DNA of 62,000 nucleotides from Octopus vulgaris (Eukaryota). A model generated the notes under the pieces. That model searched no databases, was not told the DNA's origin, and saw only the letters and a program-made list of their open reading frames with translations. The translations under genes were made by a program, and so were the position numbers. Below, piece after piece: positions 3,641-58,484 of the stretch (the stretch's first letter is position 1; every line of letters begins with the position of its first letter). The stretch lies in NCBI GenBank assembly GCA_951406725.2, contig OX597815.1, forward strand, positions 189,802,001-189,864,000, read 5' to 3'.

Positions 3641-3696
3641 TTATTTCATTTCCTGTCTTTATACACCTGTATATTTACAACCTTGTCAACATCATT

Positions 3697-4010
3697 ATCA
3701 TCATCATCGTTTTAACATCTGTTTTCCCTGCTGGCATGGGTTGGATGGCTTGACTGAGGAGTGGCAAGCCAGGTGGCCGTACCGGGCTCCAATCTGATCT
3801 GGCAAGGTTTCTACAGCTGGATACCCTTCTTAATGCCAACCACTCTGAGAGTGTAGTGGGTGCTTTTTATATGCCACCAGCATGGGGGCCAGTCAGGCGA
3901 CACTGGCATCAACCATGCTTGAAATGGTGTCTTTTACATTCCACTGGCATGGGAGCCAGTCAGGCAGCACTGGCACCAACCATGCTCGAATCGTACTTTT
4001 TAAATGCTAC
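3697..4010 (-). mobile_element. Family C retroposon 3' portion with (ATG)n tail (other copies ~10590-10922+, 17873-18245-, 20616-20815+, 26745-26850+, 28880-29195+, 45955-46200-, 48245-48492+, 51245-51592+, 59045-59205-, 60675-60830-)
   Basis: Sense consensus ...gtggcacgtaaaagcacccactacact..ggagtggttggcattaggaagggcatccagctgtagaaac...ccaacccatgccagcatgga..cgttaaatgatgatg. All copies are 5'-truncated. The trinucleotide tail suggests RTE-type mobilisation (inference). Confidence 0.8.
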
Positions 4011-9784: not shown

Positions 9785-10001
9785 TGGTGGTAGAGGAGGT
9801 GGTAACGGTGGTGGTGGTGGTGGTGTTACTGTTGTTGTTGTTGTTGTTGTGGTGGTGGTGGTGGTGGAAATGGTGTTGTTGTTGTTGGTAGTGGCGGTGA
9901 TGGTGTTGTTGTTGTTGTTGTTGTTGCTAGTAGTGGTGGTGGTGGCAGAAATGGTGGTAGCGGTGATGGTAATGGTGTTGTTGTTGTTGCTGTTGTTGTT
10001 G

Positions 10002-10033
<32 letters not shown>

Positions 10034-10100
10034 GGTGGTGGTGGTGGTGGTGATGAAGATGACGACAATGATGATAACGATGCTGATGCTGACAATGGTA

Positions 10101-10131
<31 letters not shown>

Positions 10132-10150
10132 CCACCACTGATGATGGTGA
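9785..10150. repeat. Compound (GGT/GTT/GAT)n microsatellite
   Basis: Seen directly. Confidence 0.95.
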
Positions 10151-10312
10151 TCATCAACATAATATCAGTTTCACTGATTACCATGTAATGCATTTACTTA
10201 TATAAAATATGCAATACATTTATTTATATAAAATAAAGATGGAATCATTAACATTACAAATAATTAAAATTTTAATTCATCCTTTAATTACAGAACAAAA
10301 TATTATTTAATA

Positions 10313-10553
10313 TTACGGAGATGTACTCGCATAGCAAGTGATTTGATCTGAGATCGTGTGCTGGAAAGAAAACAATTGCAGCGTGGAAGGTGTTTGTAAG
10401 CCATTTAAGAAACACACAAAAGCCGTCAGTGAACAGGTCACGGATTTTAGCGACGAAAATATTTTGACAAATTAAACTTAAATGTTGAAGTGAATCGAAC
10501 GGTTTTTGTGTGTTTCTAAAATGGCTTACAAACACCCTTCCACGCTGCAATTG
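10313..10553 (+). mobile_element. Fold-back hammerhead retroposon (family F1) with 12-bp TSD
   Basis: Inverted arms 10372-10426 / 10499-10554; one-sided ~58-bp extension on the left; TSD tattatttaata at 10301-10312 and 10554-10565; a deleted copy lies at 56131-56236. Confidence 0.8.
10425..10468 (+). ncRNA. Minimal type-I hammerhead ribozyme, G3-C8 variant core
   Basis: gtca-GTGAACA-G-GTCAC-ggatttta-GCGAC-GAA-AATATT-T-tgac: stem I 4 bp, stem II 4 of 5 pairs (mismatch fits CpG decay), palindromic stem III, UUU site. Confidence 0.65.
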
Positions 10554-11254
10554 TATTATTTAATAATATTCCACAATATCATTTAATCATATCAAGTGTT
10601 GGGCCTCACGAAGGCAATGGCCAAGACCTTTGGCATTATGTCAGGCTTGAGAAGAAGACCCTTCAAGCCGAGCAAAATTGCAGACGTGGCAGATATTGGT
10701 GTCATGCAAATGGCACCCATGCTGGTGGCATGTAAAAGCACCAATTACACTCTCAGAGTAGCTGGCATTAGGAAGGGCACCCGGCCATAGAAAACCATGC
10801 CAAATCAGACTGGGGTCTGGCACAGCCTTCCAGCTTACCAGTCCCAGTGAAACCGTCCAACCCATGCCAGCATGGACAATGGATATTAAATGATGGCGGA
10901 CATGATGATGATGATGATGATGATATCCGGCCCAAATATAATACCTGTTTTATGTACAGACTGACCATATAGTGGTGGCAGTAGTTGCGGCAGTGGTGGT
11001 GGTGGTGATGGTGGTGGCAGTGGCAGCGGTGGTGGTGGTGGTGGTGGCTGTTGTTGTTGTTAAGCAACAAGACGGGTAAGGGTGATTAGGTGATGGTCTA
11101 GGGCTTAGGGGCGGGAGACCCCAGACTTTGGAAAAAAAAAACTTTGGTTGTCTTGTTGTAGTCAAGGGCTCTTTGTTGACATCTGACACCACTGGGAGGT
11201 GGCCCTTGAAGTCGCTGGAAATGGAGATCTCCAGGTCCAAATTCTTGAATGGCT

Positions 11255-11720
11255 GGTGATGATGGTGGTAGTGGTGGTGATGATGGTGGCGGTAGTGGCA
11301 GTGGAGATGGTGGTGGTGGTAGTGTTGGTGGTGATGGTGGTAGTGATGGTGGTAGTGATGGTGGTAGTGGTGGTGGTGACAGTGGTGGTGGTAGTGGTGG
11401 TGATAGTGGTGGTGGTGGTGTAGTGGTGGTGGTGGTGATGGTAGTGGTGGTGATGATGGTGGCGGTAGTGGCAGTGGGGATGGTGGTGGTGGTAGTGGTG
11501 GTAGTGGTGGTGGTAATGGTGGTAATGGTGGTAGTTATGGTAGTGGTGGTGGTGACAGTGGTGGTGGTAGTGGTGATGATGGTGGTAGTGGTGGTGATGG
11601 TGGTGACAGTGGTGGTGGTGGTGATGGTAGTGATGGTGGTGGTGGTGGTCGTTGTCATCATTGCTGTCATTGTTGTCGGCGTCATCATCGTAGTAGTAGT
11701 AGTAGTAGTAGTAGTAAGCA
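11255..11720. repeat. Compound (GGT/GAT/GTA)n array with a ~180-bp higher-order duplication
   Basis: Block gatgatggtggcggtagtggcagtgg(a/g)gatgg occurs twice (~11280 and ~11455). Confidence 0.9.
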
Positions 11721-12125
11721 GCAGTAGTTGTTGATGATGCTGCAGTAAAGGACTGATTCATGGTAAGGTCAAAAGAAGCAGAGGTTATTTCAGAAGTAAG
11801 CACAACATGCAAATCTTACCATTTTGACAACATGGATTCTTGGTTTTAATAATCCGAGTGTTTTTTATGCCCACTGTAATATCTCCAGTGAAACGATTGC
11901 GTGGAAGTAACAAAACAGCAATAACACTGAAAACAGCAATGATACAGTTGTACCGAAACCTATTATTTTACTTTCAGGATATGTAAAAACGATACAAATA
12001 ACCAGAGTCACGGTTTACATAATTGCCAACAGTATTCTAAAAATAAAACCGCCTCAAGTTCGCACACATATCTGTTGAATTATTATTATTATTATTATTA
12101 TTATTTATTATTATTATCATTATTA

Positions 12126-14004: not shown

Positions 14005-14042
14005 TCTTTGACAATTCGGGCCTATGCTCTTTGACAGAAAGG
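14005..14042 (-). ncRNA. Decayed hammerhead-like motif of the U6 family
   Basis: ccttt-CTGTCAA-A-GAGC-atag-GCCC-GAA-TTGT-C-aaaga; homologous to the copies at 47477 and 58447. Confidence 0.4.
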
Positions 14043-14924: not shown

Positions 14925-15136
14925 GTGTGCGTGTCTTTGTGCTTTGAGTCTGCGTTTGTGCCCCACTGTTGCTTGACAACCGATATCGGTGTGCTTATGT
15001 CCCTGTAACTTAGCAGTTCAGTAAAAGAAACCGATAGAATAAGTACCAAGCTTGCAAAGAACAAGTCCTGGGGTCAATTTCTTCAAATAAAAGGTGGTGC
15101 TCCAGCATGGCCGCAGTTTGAAGCAAGTAAAAGAGT
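14925..15136 (+). mobile_element. SINE-A 3' half (similar halves ~18385-18590-, 33490-33718+, 61745-61960-)
   Basis: gcttgacaaccgat..ccgatagaataagtac..ggtgctccagcatggccgcag..aagtaaaagagt. Confidence 0.9.
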
Positions 15137-17545
15137 AAATCTAGAAATAGAGAGAATGTAGCGAAAATACTGATTATAAATGTTAGCAATAAGAAAGGAA
15201 ATACTTTTAATTGCTTGGAGAAGCTCGTTTGATTGAAGGTTTTTCATCTTATTATACATCATTCATGTGACTCCCTACTGTATTCATGTCTCGTAAGCAG
15301 AATGTTTCCCCGGAGGTATTTTATTAACAAAGATGAATTGTTTCCATAAAAGATTTATGAAAGCAATTTTTATCATTTTTCCTGTTAGCTAAATGAAAAT
15401 ATGAACCCTATATAACTACCAGTTTTTAAATATATATCGAAATTGAAAAATAAATAAACAATGTTAAAAAAAACATTGCAGCACAAAGGAAGGCAAAATG
15501 ATTTATGATTTTAAACCTTTGCAATGATATCAAACAAGGAAATTAAAAAATAACAAATAAAAAGCCTCTGTAGAAATCAATCTCAAATTAAAAAACAAAT
15601 ATATTTACATTTACAGTCAATTCAGTCTACATCAAAGGCCACTTATTCCCCATATAGACTAATATATGTTTCCAAACCTCTGGCTCAGTGATTTATAGTA
15701 ACCTTAATATCCAATGACTTATTCCTGATAACACATTTAGCGGCTGCTGTTGCTATTGCAATTTAACACAGAATGAATTCACGATCTATGCGGATCAGGA
15801 CAGCAATTATTCCTGAACTAGAAGCATGCTAGTGTAGTATTTATAACTTACTAGTAATTCAGTGTAGCATTATGGAATAACATTCAAACGCAAAAGGGAT
15901 ATTAGTATGCACAACTCAATTTCCATTCTGAACATAAGCTTGAGTGAAAGTCCTTCTGTGTAAAGCTAATCATTTTTAGTTTCCGCTTTTTGCAAAAAAA
16001 AATTTACCAGCTGTCTTCATAACGATTTATATCATCCTATTATAAACCTACATGTTTTGGTTATTTTATTTGCTTTAGAACCTCCTCTTTTTATGTGGAG
16101 GTCAGCTAATCAAAACCAATACTAAAGTGTGGATAGAATGAGATAAATCTGTGTTCTCAGTCATATGGTTACACTCCAAGAATAATTTTTTCTTCAGTAA
16201 TGTGTTAATTATGAAATCAATTGTTAATATTTTGCTATTATAAACATGACACTTAAAACTTGTTTTTTCAGCCAATAAAATATTTTTTCAGAGTAAGACT
16301 GTTCCGAGTTCAAAGGGCCTAGCTAATCATTAAAAATTTAGTTTAGCTCTAAAAATGGAAGCTTAAAACAAAATAGAATAAGACGAAAAACAAATTGCTC
16401 CATAAATATTGATTATAGGTAGCAATAATATCTGGTAGAAGATCATCAAAACTTTGACTAACATCGTAGTGACTGAGAAAAACATTATTAAATGCAAAGG
16501 TTTCATAGATAGAATCTATAAAAGTACATTAAAGAAATGAAGAGTTGCTTTTGTTTCTAAGCATTTTCAGTGTATTGAAATATGTGTCATGATAATTTTC
16601 AGAATTTTATTGATTAACCATTTTCTGAGTTTGTTACAGACACACATCCATAGCAACTAAAACTTTCTCTGCTTTAGAAAAGTGATATATTTGATTGACT
16701 TGCAGCAACTTGGATGGTTACAAATATATATTATAAAAGAGTTATGTAATTTACGAGTACAATAATTTCAGAACGTGATATTGGTTTCATTTGAATAGAT
16801 ACAAGGATACTATATTTGCAAAGAAGATTACATGGGATATTGCAATGTTCATACCTCTCCAAAAGCATTATCTGTGAAAATGAAGCAGAATGGTTCCAAT
16901 GTGAAATATACTCTCAACTGGCATACAATCTCATTTATTTATTTTATAAAGCAATTTGTGCACAATAGCTTCATTGGTTACAGGTTTCCAACAGACCAAT
17001 AATTGATTCATAGTATTTCTGACAGTGGCAATAACAAAGGAATGTCTATAATTTGGTGTAGAACAAATTATTTAAGGGAATTCATCTGAGAACTGTTGTT
17101 TTGTTTTGTTTTGTTTTTCTCGTCAATGTTTAGTTCCTTTGCTGTTACACACCACCAAAACACACACACACGTGTGTATGTCTGTGTGTGTGTGTGGTGT
17201 GGCAGATGGACTTCCAACAGAATAAAGAAAACTATCTTTCCATTGGTGTTTCCAGGCAGTGGTACGATATGTTGGCTGAGAACTCTTGACAGAAATGTTG
17301 CTATTTGGTGATGGAGTGGAATTTGATCCCTGAATGCACAACACCTCATCACAGATACCCTAAGGCATCTCATCCAATGCTCTAACAATTTCTGCCAATC
17401 CACCCAACATCAACCATAACCCCTCTGCTACATTTTAAAAATTTATTTATTTATTTTGCATATACATATCCATGTGAGTGTGTATGCGTGCGTGTTTGTG
17501 TGAGTGTGCATGTGTGTGTGTGTGCATGTGTGAGAGAGAGTATTT

Positions 17546-17830: not shown

Positions 17831-18588
17831 GTATGTGTGTGTGTGTGTATGCACACACATTGGATAGTTCAGATCATCATCATCATCATCATCATCATCG
17901 ATTAACGTCCATTTTCCATGCTGGCATGGGCTTCACGGTTTGACTGAGGGCAGGAAAGCCAGCAGCTGCACCAGGCTCCAATCTGATCTGGCAAAGTTTC
18001 TACAGCTGGGTGCCCTTCCTAATGCCAACCACTCCAAGAGTGTAGTGGGTGCTTTTTACGTACCACTGGCACAGGAGCCAGTCAGGACAGGCTTGCCATC
18101 GACCACGTTTGGATAGTACCTTTTACGTGCCACCGGCACAGGGGCCTGTCACGAGGTACTGGCATCGGCCACATTCGGATGGTGCTTTTTACATGCCACT
18201 GGCACAAGAGCCAGTCAGAGGATACTAGCATCAGCTATTGGGAACTGAGGGACATTTAGCGATGCCAGATTGTGACAGTGATGTGAAGAGTTGTTTAGTC
18301 ATGTTGCCATAGCAACTCTGATGTGGCAGAAGTAAAACTGTAACTCAGGGCTTTGAGTTCAAATTTTCAGCCTATTTATCTCTTTTACTCTTATGCTCTT
18401 TTACTTGTTTCAGTCATTTGACTGTGGCCATGCTGGAGCACTGCCTTTAGCCGAGCAAATCGACCCCCAGGACTTATTCTTTGGAAGTCTAGTACTTATT
18501 CTATCGGTCTCTTTTGCCAAACTGCTAAGTTACGGGAACATAAACACACCAGCATCGGTTATAAAGCAATGTTGGGGGGACAAACACA

Positions 18589-18990: not shown

Positions 18991-19139
18991 CCATTGTCTG
19001 AAAGTCCTTCATCACAAATCTGTGACCTCTACAGGGACACTTTCCATCTTCATGTGTGTTCTTGCTTCACTTACTCCATTCTCTGAAAAGTGTCACTGAA
19101 GAGGTCACAGATGTGTGACAAAAACTTTTTGGGCAATGG
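18991..19139. repeat. Inverted pair of decayed hammerhead-bearing repeats
   Basis: Arms 18991-19045 / 19085-19139; right arm tgtca-CTGAAGA-G-GTCAC-agatgt-GTGAC-(A)AA. Confidence 0.6.
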
Positions 19140-19146
19140 GCTTACA

Positions 19147-19471
19147 AAGCTTACAAAGAATAAGTCCTGGGGTCAATTTCTTCAACTAAAAGGTGGTGCT
19201 CCAGCATGGCCGCAGTTTGAAGCAAGTAAAAGAGTAAATCTAGAAATAGAGAGAATGTAGCGAAAATACTGATTATAAATGTTAGCAATAAGAAAGGAAA
19301 TACTTTTAATTGCTTGGAGAAGCTCATTTGATTGAAGGTTTTTCATCTTATTATACATCATTCATGTGACTCCCTACTGTATTCATGTCTTGTAAGCAGA
19401 ATGTTTCCCCGGAGGTATTTTATTAACAAAGATGAATTGTTTCCATAAAAGATTTATGAAAGCAATTTTTT
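19147..19471 (+). repeat. Near-identical local copy of 15048-15372 (SINE-A 3' tip plus ~235 bp unique flank)
   Basis: About five substitutions in ~325 bp by eye. Confidence 0.95.
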
Positions 19472-20571: not shown

Positions 20572-20845
20572 GTATATGTATATATATATGTATATATATA
20601 TATTTATATATATATACCATCCAAACGTGGTCAATGCCAGCACCGCTTTTGTGCCAGTGGCATGTAAAAAGCACCATCCAATGATAGTCGATGCCAGCTC
20701 CTCTGGTCCTTGTGCTGGTGGCACGTAAAAAGCACCAACTACACTCTTGCAGTGGTTGGTGTTAGGAATGGCATTGAGCTGTAGAAACACTGCCAGACAA
20801 GATTGGGGCCTGGTGCATGTATATATATATATATATATATATATT

Positions 20846-22659: not shown

Positions 22660-23224
22660 TATTGGGTTGTCCAGAAAGTTCATGCCGATTTTTAAAGGAA
22701 AGAAAAAGGTCAGTAAATACTTGCCATTACATTTTTAATCAACCAAATATGAACCATTTTGTTGCACAATGAATCTCCATCTTTCCTTTAACTTGAAAAT
22801 ACCCTCTTCCCAGAATTGAGGTCGTTTCATGGCAAAGAATTCATCAACGTATCTTTTTACGTCATCCAAGGAATTGAAATTTTTACCATTAAGACTATTC
22901 TGCCGAGACCTGAATAAGTGGAAATCCAAAGGAGCAATATCTAGTGAATATGGAGGGTGGGGTAACACATCCCAGCTGAGCTGTAGCAATTTTTGTCTGG
23001 TTCCCAAAGCATCAAGTGCCGAAAATGAACTTTCTTATCTTCCAAATTAAAGGGTTTGAGAATTAACACAGGTTATAGGAACATAAACCTTCTTCCACGA
23101 AAAGATAGCTTAAACTGTGCTCTAAATGGAGGTGTAGTCAAATCCTATTTTATGGACTCAACCATGTTCTAAAATAAGTTGAAAGGTAAGCTACTATAAG
23201 TTGGCACAAACTTTCCAGACAACC
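22660..23224 (-). mobile_element. Second copy of the internally deleted mariner
   Basis: TIR tattgggttgtccagaaagttcatgccgat; ORF 22735-23007 GTRQKLLQLSWDVLPHPPYSLDIAPLDFHLF...; same deletion junction as 6689-7258. Confidence 0.95.
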
Positions 23225-25745: not shown

Positions 25746-25799
<54 letters not shown>

Positions 25800-25803
<4 letters not shown>

Positions 25804-26011
25804 AACTCTTTTACTTGCTTCAGTCATTTGACTGTGGGCATGCTGGAGCACCACCTTTTAGTCGAGCAAATCGACCCCAGGACTTATTCTTTTGTAAGCC
25901 CAGTACTTATTCTATTGGTCTCTTTTGCCAAACTGCTAAGTTATGAGGACGTAAACACACCAGCATCAGTTGTCAAGCAATGTTGGGGAGGGGGACGAAT
26001 ACAGACACATT

Positions 26012-26952: not shown

Positions 26953-27580
26953 TACTCACCGGTAAAATTTCCACTTATTTCTTATTTTTATTTTCCTAAA
27001 ATTTTCATTTCATCTTGCAACCTTTTCAATATTGAAAAGGTTGCAAGAGGCAATGAAAATTCTAAGAAAATAAAAATAAGAAATAAGTGGAAATTTTACC
27101 GGTGAGTGTGTTATATTATAAGGCACAAAAAGAAAATTACTCTCCCCAGACAACAGACTATGGTTTTTAAAATTTCAGATATGGCGCCTTCTTTCAAATG
27201 GATTTTTGAGTCTATACAAAACTTTATGATTCTTTATTAATTAGCTAAACAGCTTTTAATTCAAATTTGGTCTACATGGCATAAACTTTGTTTTCTTTTT
27301 CTTTCTTTTCCCTTTTTTTTTTCTTTTTTGAAGCACCAGAATGGCAACTGCAAATGGCAAACAACATTCGCAAGAGAGCAAATACTTGCTTGCAACAAAG
27401 TTAGAGAAGATTTTACTAATCAGAGACAACATTTTAATCCAATTTGTGAAAGGGGGGGAAATGTCTAGCAACGGGTAGTAGGCACAAAAAGAAAATGACT
27501 CTCCCCTGACACAACAGAATATGCTTCAACACACAAACTCATATAAAGAATCTTGCAAACTAAATCCAAAATCGAAATAT
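26953..27580 (+). mobile_element. Fold-back element F3 (U3-A8 hammerhead family), centre collapsed, arm tip duplicated around a ~320-bp insert
   Basis: Palindrome centred on ccttttcaat|attgaaaagg; ~42-bp arm tip at 27122-27162 and 27481-27523, followed by the family tail ..gcttcaacacacaaactcatataaagaatcttgcaaac. Confidence 0.75.
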
Positions 27581-28100: not shown

Positions 28101-29261
28101 CTTCAAACCATGTGTCTTTCCATGTTCACATGCACACACACACACACACACACATATTTTCTCTGCCGTGGTCACTGATGGAACGTCTGTGGTTTGACCA
28201 CATTCTAAACACTTTACTTTGAAGCACTACTATAAACAATGGAAGTGAGCAGGAAGGTCATAACTTACTGTTCGTGCTCATCAGAGTTCAAGGTCAATCT
28301 GTGCCAAGTGGCTTTTCTCTGCATACTTTAGTTCCGTTACCTTGGCAACAGCCCCAATACTTTTTTGATCAGACCTCGTATTCTTAAATTCCATCACTAG
28401 AAATAAAATGCATTGCTGAGCAAGAAATATAACACTTAATAGCTAAGTCCACTTTTGGAAACTTATAAGGAGAAACAAATTATTGATTTTAGTCAGATAT
28501 ATTGCATAATTGATAGGCATTGTCATTATTTTGAAGTGGTACCTTAAAAGTACTCCATGGGGTACTGTAACCATAAGTATGTCATTAGTAGTATTGTCAG
28601 TGATTGCTAATTTCATAAGAATGTTTTATTTTCTTGGCTTCAGGCAATTTAAATGAACCAGAGAAATGTATAACGATTACTACACTTATATCAGGTTAGG
28701 CAACCGTGTATTTTCTTTGCGGTAGTACACCTGTTTCTGTCTTCATTCCTGATCATTCTCTCTCTCTGGCCAGGTAACCTTGAACTTCATCTACAGCAAG
28801 ACACCTGTATCTCTCTCATTATAACCGTTTCATCATCACCTCCTCCAATGCCTCCTCCCCTCTTAAAAGTTTTTGTCTTGCAGGTACTTGGTGACCCTGT
28901 CAGTATAGGTAACACATAAAAGCACCCTGTCCACTCTGCTGAGTGGTTAGTGTTAGGAAGGGCACCCAGCTGTAAAAACCTTGCCAAAACTGACCTCACC
29001 TGTGCTTGTGCCCCATAAAAAGCACCAAGTCCACTCTGCTGAGTGGTTGGTGTTCGGAAGGGCATCCAGCTGTAAAAATCCTGCCAAAACAGTCACAGAA
29101 GTCTGGTGCAGGCTTCAGTCTGGCTGGCTCTTGTGGTACTGTCCCACCCAAGCTAGCATGGAAACGGATGTTAAATGATGATGATGATGATGATAACCCA
29201 CCTTACCACAAAATCTTTGGCATCATACCTGCCTAACAATAGAAAAGTTATTCTTCACATA

Positions 29262-31769: not shown

Positions 31770-32720
31770 ATAAATCTAAATATAATGAAATTAGAATTTT
31801 TTGCTACTCTCCTACATAGAATGGAAAAAAAATTCTATATATCTAGGGAAATTACTTAGTTCATCTTGATTACCTCCCTTCCACTACTGTTTAATATATC
31901 TTATTAACTCCTGGTATATTTACTAAGTTGATAAAATTCTTCTCCATAGTTAGTAAATATTATGTCTAACATATTCTTTTAATTCGACTCTTTAATAAAA
32001 TAAATCACCATTTAGTAACTAATTATGATTTTGATTTTGATTTTGATTTTTCCAGTTTCAGCTAATGAGCTGTGGCCATGCTGGGGCACCGCCATTTGGT
32101 TTGCTACACGGTTTTACCTCACGGATGCTTTTTAGCAAACGCCATCTGATGCATGAGAGAGTTCGATGCAGCTGCCCGCATCTGCACCTCCTGCCGTGAA
32201 GTTGGTTCATCCGGGACACCTGACAGGAAGAGATCCAGTCCTACTTTAAAGACATCTGCATCTACACCATGCAGGTCCCTCAGGTTATTCGGGAGGATAT
32301 TGAAGAGCCGTGGGCCTCTGAAGCCCAGGCTATCACAATATCTTGTCCTACATCTTGATGGCAAATTTGGAGTCCATTTGGAGTTATGATTCTATATTTA
32401 TAGAAATGGACATATATATATATCTATATAAATATGAAATAATTGCAAAAAATTCTATATATCAAGAGAAATTACTTGGTTCATCTTGATTACCTCCCTT
32501 CCATTACTTTTTAATATATCTTATAGACTCCTGATATATTTGCTAAATTATTAAAGTTTTTTCCACAGTTAGTAAATACTATGTCTAACATTTTCTTTTA
32601 ATTCAACTCATTAATAAGATAAATTACCATTTACTAGCTAATTATGATTATATATTAATAGAAATGGATATATATATATATTTATATAAATATGAATTGA
32701 TTTCTATATTTTCTATAATA
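31770..32720. repeat. Diverged ~260-bp tandem repeat (about 2.3 units) interrupted by a LINE fragment
   Basis: 31820-32030 matches 32441-32648 (~85% by eye); 32384-32445 matches 32642-32700. Confidence 0.85.
32031..32383 (-). mobile_element. 5'-truncated CR1-group LINE (ORF2 C-terminus, 3'UTR, (ATCAAA)n tail)
   Basis: ORF 32119-32364 ..GPRLFNILPNNLRDL..FKVGLDLFLSGVPDEP..RAAASNSL; TSD ttatgatt at 32023-32030 and 32384-32391. Clade assigned from memory of the motif. Confidence 0.85.
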
Positions 32721-42404: not shown

Positions 42405-42716
42405 TTTTACAATGGAAAAGTTCTTAAGCAGATCAGGCCGAAAATGTCACTAGAAGCTAGGATCACCAAGCATAGATTGGCATATTTTGGTCATATTATG
42501 AGGAGAAAATCCCTGGAGAAGGATATCATGCTCGGAATGGTCAGTGGCAAGAGAGGAAGAGGCCGACCAAGAACCCGCTGGCTTAACGCCATCAAGAGTG
42601 ATACCGGAATGGACATAGCCAGTCTGAAAGAAGCAGCCCAGGATAGAACTGACTGGAGGACACTGATCCATGGCATAACCGAGAGTCGACTTCGACTGAG
42701 CGGATAGATAGATAGA
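42405..42716 (+). mobile_element. 5'-truncated RTE/BovB-like LINE with (GATA)n tail
   Basis: [76 protein letters not shown]; stop codon 42705-42707 lies in the GATA tail. Confidence 0.92.
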
Positions 42717-42755
<39 letters not shown>

Positions 42756-43055
42756 TTAATAGTAGAGAATATAAAATTACAAGGCAACAGGGGAAAACAA
42801 ACTCAATTTAGTAATACTAAATCAAGTTTAACGATATATTATATATATAAAGAATTAAGAAATAGAACCTCCATGAAATTAATTCAATTAATAGTGAAAG
42901 ATATTATCAATAATAAAATTTAATTGTAACTATATTATTAATATTGTACTAACAGTTACTATACTAAATAATACTCATTAAATCGACTACGCGCGTTTCG
43001 TAACGATATATTTAAATTGACAATATCAAAATCAGTAATCTCCAAAATTTATATT

Positions 43056-44052
43056 AATATAATCTGTTGGTGCCAAATCAGGTAAGTATGGCGGGTGTGG
43101 CAGCACTTTGCAGTATTGCGTTCGAATGGCTTCCTTGGTCATATTGGCAATACGAGGCGCGGGCGTTGTCGTGCAGAAGAAGAACTCCATGCTGACGATT
43201 AGGGCTTTTCTCTTGAATAGTCGTGTTGAGTCATTCCATCTGTTGAGCATAGAGTTCCGAATTGGCCGTTTGGTTCCACTCAAGCAATTCGAAATGGATA
43301 ATCCCTTCCCAGTCCCACCATACGCACAACATCGTTTTACGAGGATGAAGAACTTGTTTCGCTAAGCCATTCCTTATGCTGCTTCATATTGATGTACCGG
43401 TACCATTTTTTTGTCACCAGTAACGATTTAGTAAAGAAATCATTGCTTGTGTCCATGAGTTGAGCGGTGATGAGCAAGCAAACCAGCAGAGATTGTGGCT
43501 CGTTGATTTTTGTTGTCACTTAAAGCATGCGGAACCCATGCTCGATACTGCTGAACATTTCCTATCGAGTGAAGATGCTTCTCTATAGCAGCGTGGTAGC
43601 ATTCCATTTTCCATGCCAGTTCCTTTGTCGTTTGATGAGAAGTTGGTTTAATCGCTCTTCATCGAACTCAACTAGATGGCCAGAACAAGGCGTGTTTTTG
43701 AGGTCAAAATTTCCATTTTTGAACTTGACATACCAATCATGAGCGGTTCTTTTAGTAATGGCACCCTCTCCATACACAGCACAAATGTCACGAGCAGCTT
43801 TTGCGGCCTTAGAGCCTTGATTCAAAGCAAAAAGAAGGAGGTGTCGAAAATGCTTATTTTCCTTAACTTGACATTGCATTTTAATGATCTGAAAATAAAC
43901 AAAAATAAACTAAAATTAACTAGAAAAAATACAAAACACATTCCAAAATTATTCAAAAATAGAATTCACGAAAAAAATAGATTCCAAAATTTAAAAACGC
44001 AATAAATTCCAAAATTTTAAAAAACGGCGGGAACTTAGTTGCCAACTCAATA
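43056..44052 (-). mobile_element. 3'-truncated, frameshifted mariner (DD34D) with 5' TIR
   Basis: ATG at 43879: MQCQVKENKHFRHLLLFALNQGSKAAKAARDICAVYGEG..; WVPH, VTGDKKW, HDNAR, HPPYLPDLAPTD (34 residues between the 2nd and 3rd D after one frameshift); TIR ..gaacttagttgccaactcaaTA. Confidence 0.95.
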
Positions 44053-44956: not shown

Positions 44957-45240
44957 TTCGTTTTTTGGATTTGGTTTGCAAGATTCTTTATATGAGTTCA
45001 TGTGTTGAAGCATATTCTATTGTGTCTGGGGAGAGTCATTTTCTTTTTGTGCCTTATTATGTAACACACACACCGGTAAAATTTCCACATTTTTCCACAA
45101 TTTTCAAAACTATTGAAAAGGTTGCAACACGCAACGAAAATTTTAAGAAAATAAAAATAAGAAAAACGTGGAAATTTTACCGGTGAGGGTGTTACATAAT
45201 AAGGTACAAAAAGAAAATTTTTCTCCCCAGACACAATAGA
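44957..45240 (+). mobile_element. Fold-back element F3 with 12-bp TSD
   Basis: ~75-bp inverted arms, one-sided ~55-bp tail on the left, TSD atattaacatat at 44945-44956 and 45241-45252. Confidence 0.85.
45110..45147 (+). ncRNA. Minimal hammerhead motif, U3-A8 variant core
   Basis: cta-TTGAAAA-G-GTTGC-aacac-GCAAC-GAA-AATT-T-taag. Confidence 0.55.
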
Positions 45241-45782: not shown

Positions 45783-46276
45783 CACCAATGCTCAACTGAC
45801 ACTTAATTTATTATCCCCCGAGAGGAGGAAAAGTATAGTCGACTTCAGTGAAATTTGAACTCAGGACATAAAGATGGATGAAATGCTGCTAAGCACTTTG
45901 TCCAGTGCACAAACGATTCCGCCAGCTCAATGGCTTAGAAAGGACTAATCGCCATCATCATCATCATCCTCATTTAACATCCGCTTTCCATGCGGGCATT
46001 GGTTGGATGGTTTGACTGAGCACTGGTGTGCCAGAAGGCTGCACCAGGCTCCAATCTGATCTGGTAGAGTTTCTACAGCTGGGTGCCCTTCTTAATACCA
46101 ACCACTCCGAGAGTGTAATGGGCGCTTTTTACGTGCCACTGACATGGGAGCCAATCAGGCAGCACTGGCATCGACCACGTTCAGATGGTACTTTTTACAT
46201 ATCCTGTGTTTCAATTACTTACCAAATTTCAACAGTAGAAGAAAAGTTACATACATAACAGTATTTTTAGTTCTGT

Positions 46277-46452
46277 ATATAAGAGTTGAGGAATTATGTA
46301 CATTATTTACATTTGATGGATATTTGTCCTCATCTTGTTTGTTGTTAACACAACGTTTCGGCTGATATACCATCCAGCCTTCATCAGGTGTCTTGGGGAA
46401 ATTTTGAACCTGGGTTCTCATTCCTAAGGTATTTTTCGATGTCATTATTATT
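46277..46452 (-). mobile_element. Penelope pLTR-like short element carrying a canonical hammerhead
   Basis: Bounded by TA-rich sequence and a (TTA)/(GGT) tract; contains the ribozyme motif at 46347-46392. Confidence 0.6.
46347..46392 (-). ncRNA. Minimal type-I hammerhead ribozyme, canonical C3-G8 core
   Basis: gacac-CTGATGA-A-GGCTGG-atggtata-TCAGCC-GAA-ACGT-T-gtgtt; all core residues intact; palindromic ACGU stem III; GUU site. Confidence 0.85.
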
Positions 46453-47476: not shown

Positions 47477-47514
47477 CCTTTCTGTCGAAGAGCATAGGCT
47501 CGAAATGTAAAAGA
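47477..47514 (+). ncRNA. Minimal hammerhead-like motif, U6 core
   Basis: cttt-CTGTCGA-A-GAGC-atag-GCTC-GAA-ATGT-A-aaag. Confidence 0.55.
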
Positions 47515-47694: not shown

Positions 47695-48205
47695 TTATCT
47701 TTTATCTTTCACTTGTTTCAGTCATTTGACTGCGGCCATGCTGGGTCACCACCTTTAGTCGAGCAAATTGACCCCAGGACTTATTCTTTGTAAGCCTGGT
47801 ACTTATTCTATCGGTCTTTTTTGCCGAACCGCTAAGTTACAGGGATATAAACATACCAGCATCGGTCGTCAAGCAATGTTGGGGGGACAAACACAGACAC
47901 ACTTATATATACATATATACAATGGGCTTCTTTCAGTTTAGTAGACGGAAACTGAAAGAAGCCTGTCGTATATATGTATATGTATGTGCGCGTATATGTT
48001 TGTGTGTTTGTATTTGTCCCTCCAACATCACTTGACAACCGATGCAGGTGTGCTTACATCCTGTAACTTAGTGGTTCGACAAAAGAGACCAATAGAATAA
48101 GTACTAGGCTTACAAAGAATAAGTCCTGGGGTCAATGTGCTCGACTAAAGGTGGTGCTCCAGCATGGCCACAGTCAAATGACTGAAACGAGTAAAAGAGT
48201 AAGAG
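47695..48205. mobile_element. Two headless SINE-A copies fused head-to-head into a ~500-bp fold-back
   Basis: ggcttctttcagttt-agtagacgg-aaactgaaagaagcc at 47925-47963. Confidence 0.9.
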
Positions 48206-48718
48206 TATATATATACACACACACACATATATATATATATATAAGGCCCCCGTGCCGGTGGCACGTAAAAAGCACCATCCGTCCGTGGCCGTTTGCCAGC
48301 TCCGTCTGGCTCCTGTGCGGGTGGCACGTAAAAAGCACCCACTACACTCACGGAGTGGTTGGCGTTAGGAAGGGCATCCAGCCATAGAAACACTGCCAGA
48401 TCAGACTGGGCCTCGTGCAGCCTTCTGGCTTCACAGACCCCAGTTGAAACGTCCAACCCATGCGGACGCTAAATGATGATGATGATGATGATGATATATA
48501 TTATATATATATATATGTGTGTATGTATGTATGTGTGTATAAACACACACACACACACACACTGATATATGTACATGTGTATGTGTGCATATACATTTGT
48601 TTTGTTTGTACATGTCTGTAATTGCCTTGTTATGCTCATGTTCATACATAGACATATATTGCAGTAGTATATGTGGAGATATACCATATATGGGGTATAA
48701 CGTATGTCAGCATGCATG

Positions 48719-51248: not shown

Positions 51249-52279
51249 CATCCAAGCATGATCATTGCCAGGGCCGCTGACTGATTCCCATGCCAGTGGC
51301 ATGTAAAAAGCACCATTCAAACATGGTCATTACCAGCATCACCTTACTGGCACTTGTGCTGGTGGCACGTGAAAGACAACATTGAGCGAGGTCGTTGTCA
51401 GTACCGTCTGACTGGCCTTGGTGCCGGTGGCACGTAAAAGCACCCACTACACTCTTGGAGTGGTTGGCGTTAGGAACGGCATCCATCTGTAGAAACTCTG
51501 CCAAATCAAGATTGGAGCCAGTGCAGCCATTTGGCTTGCCAGTCCTCAGTCAACCCATGCCAGCATGGAAAGCAGACGTTAAATGATGATGATGAGGAGG
51601 AGGAAGTGGAGGAGGAGGAGGAGGAGGAGGAAGTGGAGGAGGAGGAGGATATATTGTTGCTTTTTTTTTAAACAGAGGAAAAGTACTTTTCCAAACTCAC
51701 AAATCATTCATCTGTGAAATGAGAGCGGACTTTATTTTTAAGCTCAGCAGGTTATGGAAAAGCAAGGCTAAGTTGTCTGTTTTAGAACACAGGACATCGC
51801 TTCTAAAAGATGTAAAATAAATATTGCAAAAACGTTCGCCAAATGTAATATCGTATATTAAATATTTTATTGACAGAAGCTCCAACTTGCATGGGGTTTC
51901 TTATATGAGATGTGTCTGTCACGAAAACTTCAGAAAATAGTTCATGACACGTAAGTTTGTCAGATGATATAGTCTAAAATGAAGTTTCTTATAGCTTATA
52001 GCATCATTCTTAAAGGGAAAAATAGAACATTATATGACAGAAACGTTAATGCAATAACTGTAAAATTTATGAACTCTTTCCTGCAGGACACAGGAGAAAA
52101 TATGTAACAGACCAATATAACTCCATGACCTCAAAAAAAATCAATCACATCAATCACAATTATCTGATACAAATTGAAGTATAATTTCTTGTCTCTTCAT
52201 AGTGCTAATATCCAGTCATTTTCACCCTGACATTAAATACTCAATAAATATCATTTTTCATTCATTTCTTTTTCAATAG

Positions 52280-53661: not shown

Positions 53662-53877
53662 ATATGTTTGTGTGTCTGTGTTTGTCTACCCAACATCGAT
53701 TGACAACCGATGCTGGTGTGTTTATGTCCCTGTAACTTAGCAGTTTGGTAAAAGAGACTGATAGAATAAGTACTAGGCTTACAAAGAATAAGTCCCGGGG
53801 TCGATTTTCTCGACTAAAGGCGGTGCTCCAGCATGGCCACAGTCAAATGACTGAAACAAGTAAAAGAGTAAAGAGTA
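53045..53877. mobile_element. Head-to-head inverted pair of SINE-A copies (53045-53450 minus, 53468-53877 plus)
   Basis: Both copies contain head, central and tail blocks; spacer is about 20 bp. Confidence 0.88.
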
Positions 53878-55467: not shown

Positions 55468-56130
55468 TAACATGTCATTTCTGTTCGGTTTACTTACTGA
55501 CTTTAAGCAGTAACAAACAATGGTAGATTGTTAACAGTTTATGCCGTTCTCTCTCTCTTAAAATTTATAAATTATTCACTTTTGTTTTTGAAGTGGAATA
55601 AATTTTGCACATTTAGACATTTAAGAATTGTTAAAGTAATTGTTTTTACAGCTGAATGGTTTTTTGTACTCTAATGGTTATATAATGGTTTATCAGAAGT
55701 GTCAGGAAAACTGGTTTTAGTAATAATATTTAAAGTAAAGAACCTGTACCAAGCAGTCTTAACTAGGTGACCCATAGAAAATATCTCAGGGACATGTTCT
55801 GCATGCAAATAGGAATAGCATTTGTATTTGTGTACCATTTCTCCGTTTTTTACTGTCCTTCTTTTGTATACATTTGCTGCTTTCTTCCAAGGAATCTAGT
55901 GCTCTTAGTTTAGATTTTCCTTGGGGCTGGCCAGATTGAAGCAGTCTTGAGTATAACCAGTCAAAACTGCAAAGATGATCTGGAACTCGACTGAGGAAAG
56001 AAAACTCCGAATGACCCATCCTTGTTTTCTCTTGTCCCTTTTTGTATCATCTGTCTGGATGGTTTGTCGTCGCCTGTTGTATTCTTGTCCCACTTTTTGT
56101 ATTCTTATATATATATATATATATATATAT

Positions 56131-56236
56131 TACGGAGATGTACTTGCATAGCAAGTGACCTGATCTGAGATCGTGTGCTGGAACGGTTTTTGTGTGTTTC
56201 TTAAATGGCTTATAAACACCTTCCACGCTGCAATTG
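56131..56236 (+). mobile_element. Deleted copy of fold-back F1
   Basis: Matches 10314-10366 joined to 10500-10554 at a GAA microhomology. Confidence 0.9.
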
Positions 56237-56364
56237 TTTATATATATATATATGTGCGTGTGTATGTGTGTGTGTGTGTGTATACAGGGTAAGAGTTATT
56301 AAAACAATAACTTTTACCAGGGGTCAGCATACGTAATAAAAGTCAGAAAAAATAAATATTTCTA

Positions 56365-56681: not shown

Positions 56682-57011
56682 TTCGTTTTGGTTTGCAAGA
56701 TTCTTTATATGAGTTCGTGTGTTGAAGCATATTCTGTTGTGTCTGGGGAGAGTCACTTTCTTTTTGTGCCTTATTATTCAACACACTCACCGGTAAAATT
56801 TCCACATATTCCTTATTTTTATTTTCTAAAATTTTCGTTGCATGTTGCAACCTTTTCAATAGTTTTGAGAGTCAAAACTATTGAAAAGGTTGCAAAACGC
56901 AACAAAAAATAATTTTAGAAAATAAAAATTAAGAAATAAGTGGAAATTTTACCAGTGAGTGTGTTAAATAATAAGGCACAAAAAGAAAGTGACTCTCCCC
57001 AGACACAACAG

Positions 57012-58446: not shown

Positions 58447-58484
58447 TCTTTCTGTTGAAGAGCGTAGGCTCGAAACGTTAAAGA
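58447..58484 (+). ncRNA. Minimal hammerhead-like motif, U6 core (best copy)
   Basis: tcttt-CTGTTGA-A-GAGC-gtag-GCTC-GAA-ACGT-T-aaaga; all three stems perfect. Confidence 0.65.

What the first reader, a model, noticed from the sequence alone, without database searches (positions are those of the whole stretch)
10425..10468. Natural hammerhead with a swapped G3-C8 tertiary pair
Seen: GUGAACA replaces CUGANGA inside an otherwise complete type-I topology (stem I, stem II, GAA, palindromic AAUAUU stem III, NUH). Established: C3 and G8 form a Watson-Crick tertiary pair in the active hammerhead, and compensatory swaps can keep activity. Inference: a double compensatory change in a mobile family implies selection for cleavage; standard CUGANGA searches would miss it.
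Basis: partly seen in the sequence, partly recalled or inferred. Interest (0 to 1): 0.88.

Follow-up and report, generated by a model that had tools for sequence, protein, structure and literature searches.

The report
Retroelement hammerhead motif with swapped core pair
The 44-base motif is real and looks like the small "dimer-type" hammerhead ribozyme carried by Penelope-like retroelements of animals, here with its C3-G8 core pair flipped to G3-C8, but only one copy could be examined and self-cleavage is untested.

Summary
The motif is at 10425-10468 (+) as described.

It is not a chance match. A descriptor built to fit it expects 0.025 hits per shuffled window. Its closest relative in the window (19092-19131) has the canonical CUGAAGA core. 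The window also holds three other families of minimal hammerhead-like motifs with the published traits of Penelope-like-element (PLE) hammerheads: an extra base after A9, a G10.1-C11.1 pair, a palindromic helix III and head-to-head inverted copies.

The host repeat looks like a young 5'-truncated retroelement insertion. It has an 11-bp target duplication and an inverted partner copy, and the predicted cut lies 90 nt from its 3' end.

The G3/C8 swap was probably inherited from the source element. Selection for cleavage is not shown:
- the only other copy of the repeat lacks the motif;
- the source species is absent from every searchable collection;
- a neighbouring family propagates with an uncompensated core change.

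Verdict: a plausible new core variant of a known ribozyme class. Interest is moderate.

The parts
10313..10554 (+). F1 copy 1: the whole inserted repeat unit (TTACGGAG...GCAATTGT), 242 bp.
   Evidence: Bounded by an 11-bp direct repeat. The termini are shared with copy 2.
10302..10312 (.). Left copy of the putative target-site duplication, ATTATTTAATA.
   Evidence: Read directly from the sequence. An identical 11-mer lies at 10555-10565.
10555..10565 (.). Right copy of the putative target-site duplication, ATTATTTAATA.
   Evidence: Read directly from the sequence.
10313..10366 (+). L segment (54 nt), shared with copy 2. It may be the PLE 'tail' extension; that is inference.
   Evidence: Alignment A6 shows 3 differences in 54 nt. 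The tail concept comes from PMC8557442 and PMC11167929.
10370..10426 (-). Inverted, more truncated copy of the R segment. It forms the left arm of the long hairpin.
   Evidence: Inverted repeats I1 and I2. It differs from R by 2 substitutions and 1 indel in 56 nt.
10425..10428 (+). Helix I, 5' strand (GUCA). G10425 and U10426 can alternatively pair with C10500 and A10499 of the long hairpin.
10429..10435 (+). Core strand GUGAACA, positions 3-9: G3, U4, G5, A6, A7, C8, A9.
   Evidence: The homologues at 19096-19102 and 19028-19034 (minus strand) read CUGAAGA and CUGUAGA.
10436..10436 (+). Unpaired G between A9 and G10.1.
   Evidence: This is a conserved trait of PLE minimal hammerheads (PMC4209133). 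All other motif families in the window have it too.
10437..10454 (+). Helix II: GUCAC/GCGAC with an A·C mismatch and an 8-nt loop. The G10.1-C11.1 pair is present.
10455..10457 (+). G12, A13, A14.
10458..10463 (+). AAUAUU palindrome, positions A15.1 to U16.1. Helix III can form only between two molecules or two copies.
   Evidence: The dimer model comes from PMC4209133 and PMC6765202.
10464..10468 (+). U17 (10464), the predicted cleavage site 10464|10465, and the helix I 3' strand UGAC (10465-10468).
10469..10498 (+). 30-nt spacer between the motif and the R segment.
10499..10554 (+). R segment: the 3'-terminal part of the repeat and the right arm of the hairpin. Its end is 90 nt from the predicted cut.
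56130..56237 (+). F1 copy 2: L joined directly to R inside a (TA)n microsatellite. It lacks the left arm, the hammerhead motif and the spacer.
19084..19133 (+). Homologue B: GUCA CUGAAGA G GUCAC-AGAUGU-GUGAC AAAA. It has canonical C3/G8 but G12 changed to A.
19007..19046 (-). Homologue A, head-to-head with B: GUCC CUGUAGA G GUCAC-AGAUUU-GUGAU GAAG. Its core is decayed.

Best explanation
**What it is.** The locus is a young, 5'-truncated insertion of a Penelope-like retroelement, or of a short element that depends on one. The 44-nt motif is that family's minimal type-I hammerhead.

**Build of the insertion.** It has the typical PLE layout:
- a 3'-terminal fragment (motif, 30-nt spacer, R segment);
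- an even more truncated inverted copy of R abutting its 5' end, which creates the roughly 60-bp hairpin;
- an extra segment, L, at one end;
- an 11-bp target duplication.

**How the ribozyme would work.** The mechanism is the published one for this class; none of it is shown here.
- Helix I (4 bp) and helix II form within one RNA.
- The AAUAUU palindrome of two copies pairs to build a shared helix III.
- The G3-C8 pair replaces C3-G8 in the core.
- The chain is cut after U17 (10464|10465), leaving a 2',3'-cyclic phosphate and a 5'-OH.

**Origin of the swap.** It was most likely already present in the source element's RNA when this copy was made. That is inference.

**Status today.** This genomic copy is probably an inert fossil. 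I put about 0.35 on RNA of this sequence showing detectable dimer-dependent self-cleavage in vitro.
For: **The motif is not random.** The architecture is complete and non-random.

**It matches published PLE minimal hammerheads** (PMC4209133):
- an unpaired base between A9 and G10.1;
- a G10.1-C11.1 pair;
- a 4-5 bp helix I;
- a palindromic 15.x-16.x segment;
- dimer dependence.

**The window holds more motifs of this build.** They total far more than shuffles give: 4 hits with at most one mismatch against 0.02 expected, and 4 against 0.043.
- 46347-46392 (minus strand): canonical core.
- Family D: a U3-A8 core.
- Family C.
- The A/B pair at 19 kb.

**A relative has the canonical core.** The 44-mer's best relative in the window has the canonical core, and no shuffle reached its alignment score (0 of 300). 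The consensus of F1, A and B is CUGAAGA...GAAA.

**The insertion shows PLE hallmarks** (PMC8557442):
- heavy 5' truncation;
- an inverted truncated copy at the 5' end;
- insertion in or beside microsatellites.

**The geometry fits.** The cut site lies 90 nt from the 3' end. In the Anolis PLE, reverse transcription starts 85-92 nt 3' of the cut (PMC11167929).

**The swap probably predates the insertion.** The two arms differ by 2 substitutions in 56 nt, about 2% per arm. Two specific post-insertion hits at positions 3 and 8 are therefore improbable, on the order of 1e-4 (my estimate).

**Catalysis is feasible in principle.**
- The C3G/G8C double mutant partly restores cleavage in a PLE hammerhead (PMC11167929).
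- U at position 17 avoids the proposed G3-C17 trap (inference from PMC3884650).
- Natural hammerheads with 2-bp helix II exist (PMC3088659).
Against: - No PLE reverse-transcriptase or GIY-YIG coding remnant was found in the window. Ten ORFs tested against Pfam gave only a mariner domain.
- Only one copy carries the motif.
- Helix II is weaker than the 6-8 bp typical of PLE minimal hammerheads, and it has an A·C mismatch.
- The isolated 56-nt RNA folds no better than shuffles (z = -0.14).
- In the full element the long hairpin dominates (-113.5 kcal/mol), and the hammerhead helices are not in the minimum-energy fold.
- Homodimer folding prefers other pairings to the double-hammerhead.
- No Rfam hammerhead model matches. 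The same is true of the canonical-core motif, so this counts for little.
- Published PLE minimal hammerheads cleave poorly in vitro even with canonical cores (PMC4209133).
Confidence: 0.6

Rival explanations
1. The G3-C8 hammerhead is the working ribozyme of an active mobile family. The double change was fixed because cleavage is selected, and the RNA cleaves as a dimer.
For: - The two differences from the canonical homologue fall exactly on the 3-8 pair and keep it Watson-Crick. I estimate the neutral chance at about 0.02, given 10 differences in 42 aligned sites.
- All other core positions, G10.1-C11.1, helix I and a perfect 6-nt palindrome are intact in F1. The relatives A and B each carry inactivating core changes.
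- The family is young: 2-6% divergence between copies and arms.
- The swap probably predates the insertion.
- The double mutant is partly active in vitro (PMC11167929).
Against: - It rests on a single copy; the other F1 copy lacks the motif.
- Three sequences give no statistical support.
- Family C propagated with an uncompensated A6U change.
- Hammerhead mutations did not affect PLE insertion in vitro (PMC11167929), and Naiad PLEs thrive without hammerheads (PMC8557442).
- Helix II carries a destabilising A·C mismatch.
Confidence: 0.25
2. An inactive relic. The motif descends from a PLE-type hammerhead, but the two core changes are neutral decay that happens to be complementary, and the RNA does not cleave.
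For: - Relatives A and B and several family D copies show ordinary core decay: G12A, A6U, C11.1U.
- Family C shows that core-variant families spread here.
- Helix II is weakened, and thermodynamic folding does not favour the hammerhead fold.
- With thousands of such motifs per animal genome (PMC4209133), a few complementary double hits are expected.
Against: - Both changes are C/G transversions on the one tertiary pair, and every other core base is kept.
- The changes probably arose before insertion, in a lineage still able to transpose (inference).
Confidence: 0.3
3. A chance look-alike. The repeat is simply a hairpin-forming element (MITE-like or miRNA-precursor-like), and its loop happens to resemble a hammerhead.
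For: - The motif sits in the 72-nt loop of a near-perfect hairpin.
- Rfam's only hits are long-hairpin miRNA models, far below their thresholds.
- The local fold is unremarkable.
- The descriptor was tailored to the motif after the fact.
Against: - Shuffle expectation is 0.025-0.043 per window.
- There is a significant homologue with a canonical core.
- Three other motif families of identical build lie in the same window.
- The element's ends are not inverted repeats, and the 11-bp duplication points to a retroelement rather than a MITE.
Confidence: 0.08

Closest known systems
Minimal type-I hammerheads of Penelope-like elements (Cervera & de la Peña 2014, PMC4209133; Lünse, Weinberg & Breaker 2017, cited in PMC6765202).
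   Same: - Open helix I of 4 bp.
- An unpaired base between A9 and G10.1.
- A G10.1-C11.1 pair.
- GAAA followed by a palindromic 15.x-16.x segment, so helix III forms only in a dimer.
- It occurs as a single motif in truncated copies and in head-to-head inverted arrangements.
- It lies about 90 nt from the 3' end of the unit.
   Different: - The core pair is G3-C8 instead of C3-G8, or the known U3-A8.
- Helix II is shorter (5 pairs with one A·C mismatch, against 6-8 bp).
- The palindrome is 6 nt rather than the usual 4.
- No PLE reading frame lies nearby in the window.
Natural U3-A8 hammerhead core variants (Perreault et al. 2011, PMC3088659; Cercyon PLEs of Schistosoma mansoni, PMC4209133).
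   Same: - A Watson-Crick-preserving change of the 3-8 tertiary pair in natural sequences.
- The window itself holds such a family (family D, UUGAAAA core).
   Different: - Here the pair is inverted (G-C) rather than replaced by U-A.
- The U3-A8 variants are supported by many copies and by assays. This one is a single copy with no assay.
Engineered C3G/G8C double mutants (Martick & Scott 2006, as cited in PMC11167929; the PAc PLE hammerhead, PMC11167929).
   Same: The same two substitutions. They show that the swapped pair can support partial activity, including in a PLE hammerhead.
   Different: Those are laboratory mutants of otherwise optimal ribozymes. Rescue is only partial and depends on context.
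Dimer-dependent hammerheads of newt satellite 2 and ASBVd (Forster et al. 1988, cited in PMC4209133 and PMC6765202), and non-LTR retrozymes of animals.
   Same: A weak or absent helix III in the monomer, so activity needs two copies.
   Different: Those occur as tandem repeats that supply the second copy in cis. F1 is dispersed and has one sense copy per locus.

Membership tests
Hammerhead ribozyme (core definition) | Core strand 1: C3 U4 G5 A6 N7 G8 A9. | tested here: not met
   The sequence is GUGAACA. U4, G5, A6 and A9 are present. Positions 3 and 8 are G and C instead of C and G.
Hammerhead ribozyme (core definition) | Positions 3 and 8 can form a Watson-Crick pair. | tested here: met
   G10429 and C10434. 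The homologues have C and G at these positions (CG in 2 sequences, GC in 1).
Hammerhead ribozyme (core definition) | G12 A13 A14, A15.1-U16.1, and position 17 not G. | tested here: met
   GAA at 10455-10457, A10458, U10463, U10464. The 15.1-16.1 pair can form only between two copies.
Hammerhead ribozyme (core definition) | Three helices around the core. | tested here: inconclusive
   Helix I has 4 bp. Helix II has 3 bp, a mismatch, then 1 bp. Helix III exists only as an intermolecular 6-bp A/U duplex, and it is not the preferred homodimer fold.
Hammerhead ribozyme (core definition) | Site-specific self-cleavage after position 17. | not testable with these tools
   This needs transcription and cleavage assays, or mapping of RNA ends.
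Hammerhead ribozyme (Rfam models) | A match to an Rfam hammerhead covariance model. | tested here: not met
   There is no hammerhead hit at gathering score or at E<=10. The canonical-core minimal motif at 46347-46392 and families C and D are also missed, so the test is blind to this subclass.
PLE-type minimal hammerhead | An unpaired nucleotide between A9 and G10.1. | tested here: met
   G10436. The feature is defined in PMC4209133.
PLE-type minimal hammerhead | A G10.1-C11.1 pair. | tested here: met
   G10437-C10454.
PLE-type minimal hammerhead | Palindromic 15.2-16.2 (dimeric helix III) and a short helix I (4-5 bp). | tested here: met
   AAUAUU at 10458-10463; helix I is GUCA/UGAC.
PLE-type minimal hammerhead | A long helix II (6-8 bp). 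| tested here: not met
   Five positions with one A·C mismatch. Homologue B has 5 perfect pairs.
PLE-type minimal hammerhead | Location in the pseudo-LTR or 3' region of an element that encodes a PLE reverse transcriptase and GIY-YIG endonuclease. | tested here: inconclusive
   No such reading frame was found in the window (only 10 ORFs tested). Structural hallmarks are present: an inverted 5'-truncated partner, a target duplication, a microsatellite context, and a cut site 90 nt from the 3' end.
PLE-type minimal hammerhead | Membership of a consensus family of many copies with covariation in the helices. | tested here: inconclusive
   Only three related sequences are available (F1, A, B). There is one compensatory pair (3-8) and no statistical power. 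The source genome is not in any searchable collection.
MITE or hairpin miRNA precursor | Terminal inverted repeats at the element ends with a short fixed-length target duplication, or a match to a curated miRNA family. | tested here: not met
   The termini TTACGGAG... and ...GCAATTGT are not inverted repeats, and the hairpin arms are internal. The miRNA models score 31-53 bits against thresholds of 98-245.

The most novel reading that the evidence does not exclude
A recently active Penelope-like lineage, or a short element that depends on one, propagates in this animal with a hammerhead whose C3-G8 tertiary pair is inverted to G3-C8 and still cleaves as a dimer. That would be the first natural G-C-swapped hammerhead core. 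It would show that evolution constrains the pairing at 3-8 and not the identity of the two bases, and that motif searches fixed on CUGANGA undercount hammerheads.
Probability: 0.25. Interest if true: 0.5.

Novelty: new variant of a known kind. Interest (0 to 1): 0.38.

Why it matters
If the G3-C8 version is conserved across the family and cleaves, all three observed states of the 3-8 pair would exist in nature: C-G, U-A and G-C. That would be natural confirmation of the tertiary pair seen in the full-length crystal structure.

It would also argue for relaxing hammerhead descriptors and covariance models. Those already miss the whole PLE minimal class in this window.

The class, its dimer mechanism, the U3-A8 covariation and the activity of the engineered double mutant are all published. 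The gain is therefore incremental and does not change a concept.

Tried and rejected
**Rfam.** I searched at gathering score and at E<=10 on three sub-regions. No hammerhead was found anywhere. I do not count this as evidence, because the canonical-core minimal motif is missed as well.

**External copies of the repeat.** None of these searches produced a usable copy:
- Two metagenome scans found nothing.
- Of two genome-collection scans, the first found nothing. The second gave six 19-mer hits in bacterial MAGs with about 25% flanking identity, so they are chance matches.
- Two viral-contig scans gave 11 hits to a 17-base pattern, presumed random and not examined, and none for the arm.
- A protein search with the 88-aa spurious ORF that spans the element, meant to catch called ORFs from other copies, found nothing.

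**Identifying the source species to fetch more of its genome.**
- The mariner fragment's best hits reach 66-68% identity, in bees and in unnamed ENA contigs.
- The retroelement-tail fragment reaches 70% at best.
- The species is therefore not represented, and the family-wide conservation test could not be run.

**Other attempts.**
- Pfam on ten ORFs, looking for PLE reverse-transcriptase or GIY-YIG remnants, gave only a mariner HTH domain and one sub-threshold low-complexity hit.
- Thermodynamic folding of the monomer, the homodimer and the full element does not single out the hammerhead fold. This does not discriminate, because the canonical motifs behave the same way.
- A covariance model built from the window's other motifs was abandoned because MAFFT misaligned the families.
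- I first scored the extra G at 10436 and the loopless stem III as defects. The literature shows both are hallmarks of PLE minimal hammerheads.
- No tRNA was found in the window.

Full report
**1. What is in the sequence**

The window is AT-rich (about 35% GC). It is packed with microsatellites, SINE-like repeats and mariner fragments, has no tRNAs, and contains no long non-repetitive ORF. It is a piece of an animal-type nuclear genome.

At 10425-10468 (+) the sequence reads GUCA | GUGAACA | G | GUCAC-GGAUUUUA-GCGAC | GAA | AAUAUU | U | UGAC.
- a 4-bp helix I;
- a core strand with G and C at positions 3 and 8;
- helix II, then GAA;
- a six-base palindrome that cannot fold on itself but can pair between two copies;
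- U at position 17, which puts the predicted cut at 10464|10465.

One is an unpaired G (10436) between A9 and helix II. The other is an A·C mismatch that interrupts helix II after three pairs.

**2. Context**

The motif lies at the tip of a near-perfect hairpin of about 60 bp, with arms at roughly 10370-10426 and 10499-10554. The 281-nt stretch spanning the hairpin (10295-10575) folds at -113.5 kcal/mol, z = -13.

The unit is bounded by an 11-bp direct repeat, ATTATTTAATA (10302-10312 and 10555-10565). It runs from TTACGGAG to GCAATTGT (10313-10554).

The only other copy of the repeat in the window is 56130-56237, inside a (TA)n tract. It joins the left segment L directly to the right segment R. 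It therefore lacks the left arm, the motif and the spacer. The 'F1 family' supplies no second copy of the motif.

**3. Is it chance?**

- A descriptor that accepts the motif finds it and one other site. Shuffled windows give 0.025 hits on average, and none with G3/C8.
- That descriptor was written after the fact, so I looked for independent evidence.
  - The 44-mer's best other alignment in the window is 19092-19131, GUCA CUGAAGA G GUCAC-AGAUGU-GUGAC AAAA. It scores 17, against a maximum of 16 in 300 shuffles. This relative has the canonical C3/G8 but has lost G12.
  - A head-to-head partner on the other strand (19046-19007) is a further decayed copy. The consensus of the three is a canonical hammerhead core.
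  - A half-descriptor (core strand, one extra base, helix II closed by G-C, GAAA) gives 4 hits with at most one mismatch against 0.02 expected. It gives 4 hits with any Watson-Crick 3-8 pair against 0.043 expected.

The hits across these scans are:
- the finding itself;
- homologue B at 19096-19123;
- a perfect canonical motif at 46347-46392 (minus strand): GACAC CUGAUGA A GGCUGG-AUGGUAUA-UCAGCC GAAA CGU U GUGUU;
- family D, with a UUGAAAA (U3-A8) core, five copies, always in head-to-head pairs;
- family C, with CUGUYGA (A6U), in all three copies.

The window is therefore rich in one particular kind of motif, and the finding belongs to it.

**4. What kind**

Cervera & de la Peña (PMC4209133) described minimal type-I hammerheads in the pseudo-LTRs of Penelope-like elements (PLEs), scattered in thousands through metazoan genomes. 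The traits they list are:
- a short helix I;
- a conserved unpaired nucleotide between 9 and 10.1;
- a conserved G10.1-C11.1 pair;
- a palindromic 15.2-16.2 segment, so that helix III forms only in a dimer;
- frequent single motifs from truncated elements;
- pairs on opposite strands 100-700 bp apart;
- low activity in vitro.

They also found a natural U3-A8 covariation, as did Perreault et al. (PMC3088659). All motif families in this window show these traits, including the finding. What I first counted as defects (the extra G and the loopless stem III) are class hallmarks.

Craig et al. (PMC8557442) list the insertion hallmarks of PLEs: heavy 5' truncation, an inverted 5'-truncated copy abutting the 5' end, a 30-40 bp 'tail' at one end, and a bias for microsatellites.
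- F1 copy 1 fits as [L][inverted R][motif-spacer-R] with a target duplication, lying between large trinucleotide arrays.
- Copy 2 lies in (TA)n.
- Families D and A/B are head-to-head pairs.

In the Anolis PLE studied in vitro, reverse transcription starts 111-118 nt into the ORF and the hammerhead cut is 26 nt into it. The copy's 3' end is therefore 85-92 nt past the cut (PMC11167929). In F1 the distance is 90 nt, and in families C and D it is about 100-110 nt (my reading).

I found no PLE reading frame in the window. The assignment to a PLE, or to a short PLE-dependent element, is therefore an inference from architecture.

**5. The swap**

Relative to homologues A and B, F1 differs at both position 3 (C to G) and position 8 (G to C). 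It is the only pair in the three-way alignment with a change on both sides. With three sequences this has no formal power: 164 of 500 shuffles do as well.

As a rough estimate, there are 10 differences in 42 aligned sites. The chance that two of them fall on these two sites and preserve pairing is about 0.02.

The two hairpin arms, presumably identical when the insertion formed, differ by 2 substitutions and 1 indel in 56 nt. That is about 2% per arm, so two specific later hits are very unlikely. The swap was probably present in the RNA that was copied, that is, in an element still able to move. Copies and arms differ by only 2-6%, so the family is young.

**6. Does it cleave?**

For:
- The engineered C3G/G8C double mutant partly restores cleavage, including in a PLE hammerhead (PMC11167929).
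- A G3-C8 variant was reported to be hampered by pairing of G3 with C17 (PMC3884650). Here position 17 is U, which should lessen that trap (inference).
- Helix II of 2 bp occurs in active natural hammerheads (PMC3088659).

Against:
- Even canonical PLE minimal hammerheads cleave poorly in vitro (PMC4209133).
- Rescue by the double mutant is only partial.
- Helix II is weak.
- The hammerhead fold is not favoured for the monomer (z = -0.14), the homodimer or the full element.
- Family C carries a non-compensable A6U change in all copies, so a mobile family here can carry a variant core with no sign of catalytic constraint.
- Hammerhead mutations did not change PLE insertion in vitro (PMC11167929), and Naiad PLEs lack hammerheads altogether (PMC8557442).

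I put about 0.35 on detectable dimer-dependent cleavage. This genomic copy is truncated and has no evident promoter, so it is most likely inert.

**7. What could not be done**

The decisive test is conservation of G3/C8 across many copies, and it needs the source genome. The species is absent from every searchable collection:
- The metagenome scans found nothing, and the bacterial-genome and viral scans gave nothing or chance hits.
- A search with the spurious ORF that spans the element found nothing.
- Two transposon-protein searches reached only 66-70% identity, in unrelated taxa.

Rfam finds no hammerhead for any motif here, including the canonical one.

**8. Verdict**

This is a member of the known PLE minimal-hammerhead class in a young truncated retroelement copy. 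It carries a G3-C8 core pair that I could not find reported as a natural variant in the searchable literature. It counts as a new variant of a known kind and is of moderate interest. The variant rests on a single copy, and neither conservation nor cleavage has been tested.

Noticed in passing
window 46347-46392 (minus strand): A textbook PLE-type minimal hammerhead with a fully canonical core: GACAC CUGAUGA A GGCUGG-AUGGUAUA-UCAGCC GAAA CGU U GUGUU. It has a 5-bp helix I, a 6-bp helix II and an ACGU palindrome. It is single-copy in the window, next to an (ACC/ACT)n array. No Rfam hit.
   Followed up: partly
window 45105-45161 (+), 56812-56867 (-), 56873-56908 (+), 27030-27080 (+), 26981-27031 (-): Family D: minimal hammerhead-like motifs with a UUGAAAA core (U3-A8, the known natural covariation), G as the extra base, helix II GUUGC/GCAAC, and GAAA AUU U. 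They always occur as head-to-head inverted pairs or long palindromes of about 230-290 bp. Some copies have decayed (C11.1U, G12A).
   Followed up: partly
window 47482-47505 (+), 58452-58475 (+), 14014-14037 (-): Family C: CUUU CUGU(C/U)(G/A)A A GAGC-NUAG-GCUC GAAA CGU N AAAG at the 5' end of a repeat of about 150 nt. The minimal-hammerhead build is perfect, but core position 6 is U instead of A in all three copies. I could not tell whether this is an inactive family or a tolerated variant.
   Followed up: partly
window 19007-19046 (-) and 19084-19133 (+): A head-to-head pair of decayed copies related to the finding, separated by 37 nt. They lie immediately upstream of a SINE-like repeat (19143-19400) that is 97.7% identical to 15044-15301.
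   Followed up: yes
window 10364-10562: Rfam long-hairpin plant and animal miRNA models (MIR2646, MIR8562, mir-3145) give sub-threshold hits, 31-53 bits against 98-245. These reflect only the long inverted repeat. A similar hit (MIR6445) falls on the family D palindrome at 45053-45203.
   Followed up: yes
window 22738-23034 (-) and 43035-43909 (-): Degenerate mariner/Mos1-type transposase fragments: an HTH_48 domain (E = 4e-19) and a C-terminal piece 66-68% identical to its best database hits, which include SETMAR-like proteins of bees.
   Followed up: partly
window 42405-42704 (+) and 32122-32391 (-): C-terminal tails of retroelement reading frames with no Pfam match. The first is embedded in a (CA)n/(TA)n tract, and its best database relatives are 51-70% identical.
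   Followed up: partly
window 3686-3939, 10711-10924, 17873-18126, 20662-20817, 28917-29194, 45953-46200, 48265-48495, 51383-51588 and others: A SINE-like repeat of about 200 bp with at least 10 copies (73-85% identity). A second repeat of about 100 bp has about 12 copies (for example 19143-19238, 25789-25899, 47701-47801, 53771-53872). Together with the microsatellites they make up a noticeable part of the window.
   Followed up: no
window 9800-10140 and 10890-11800: Very long imperfect trinucleotide arrays (TGG/TGT/GAT and related) flank the F1 insertion on both sides. They generate long spurious low-complexity ORFs.
   Followed up: no
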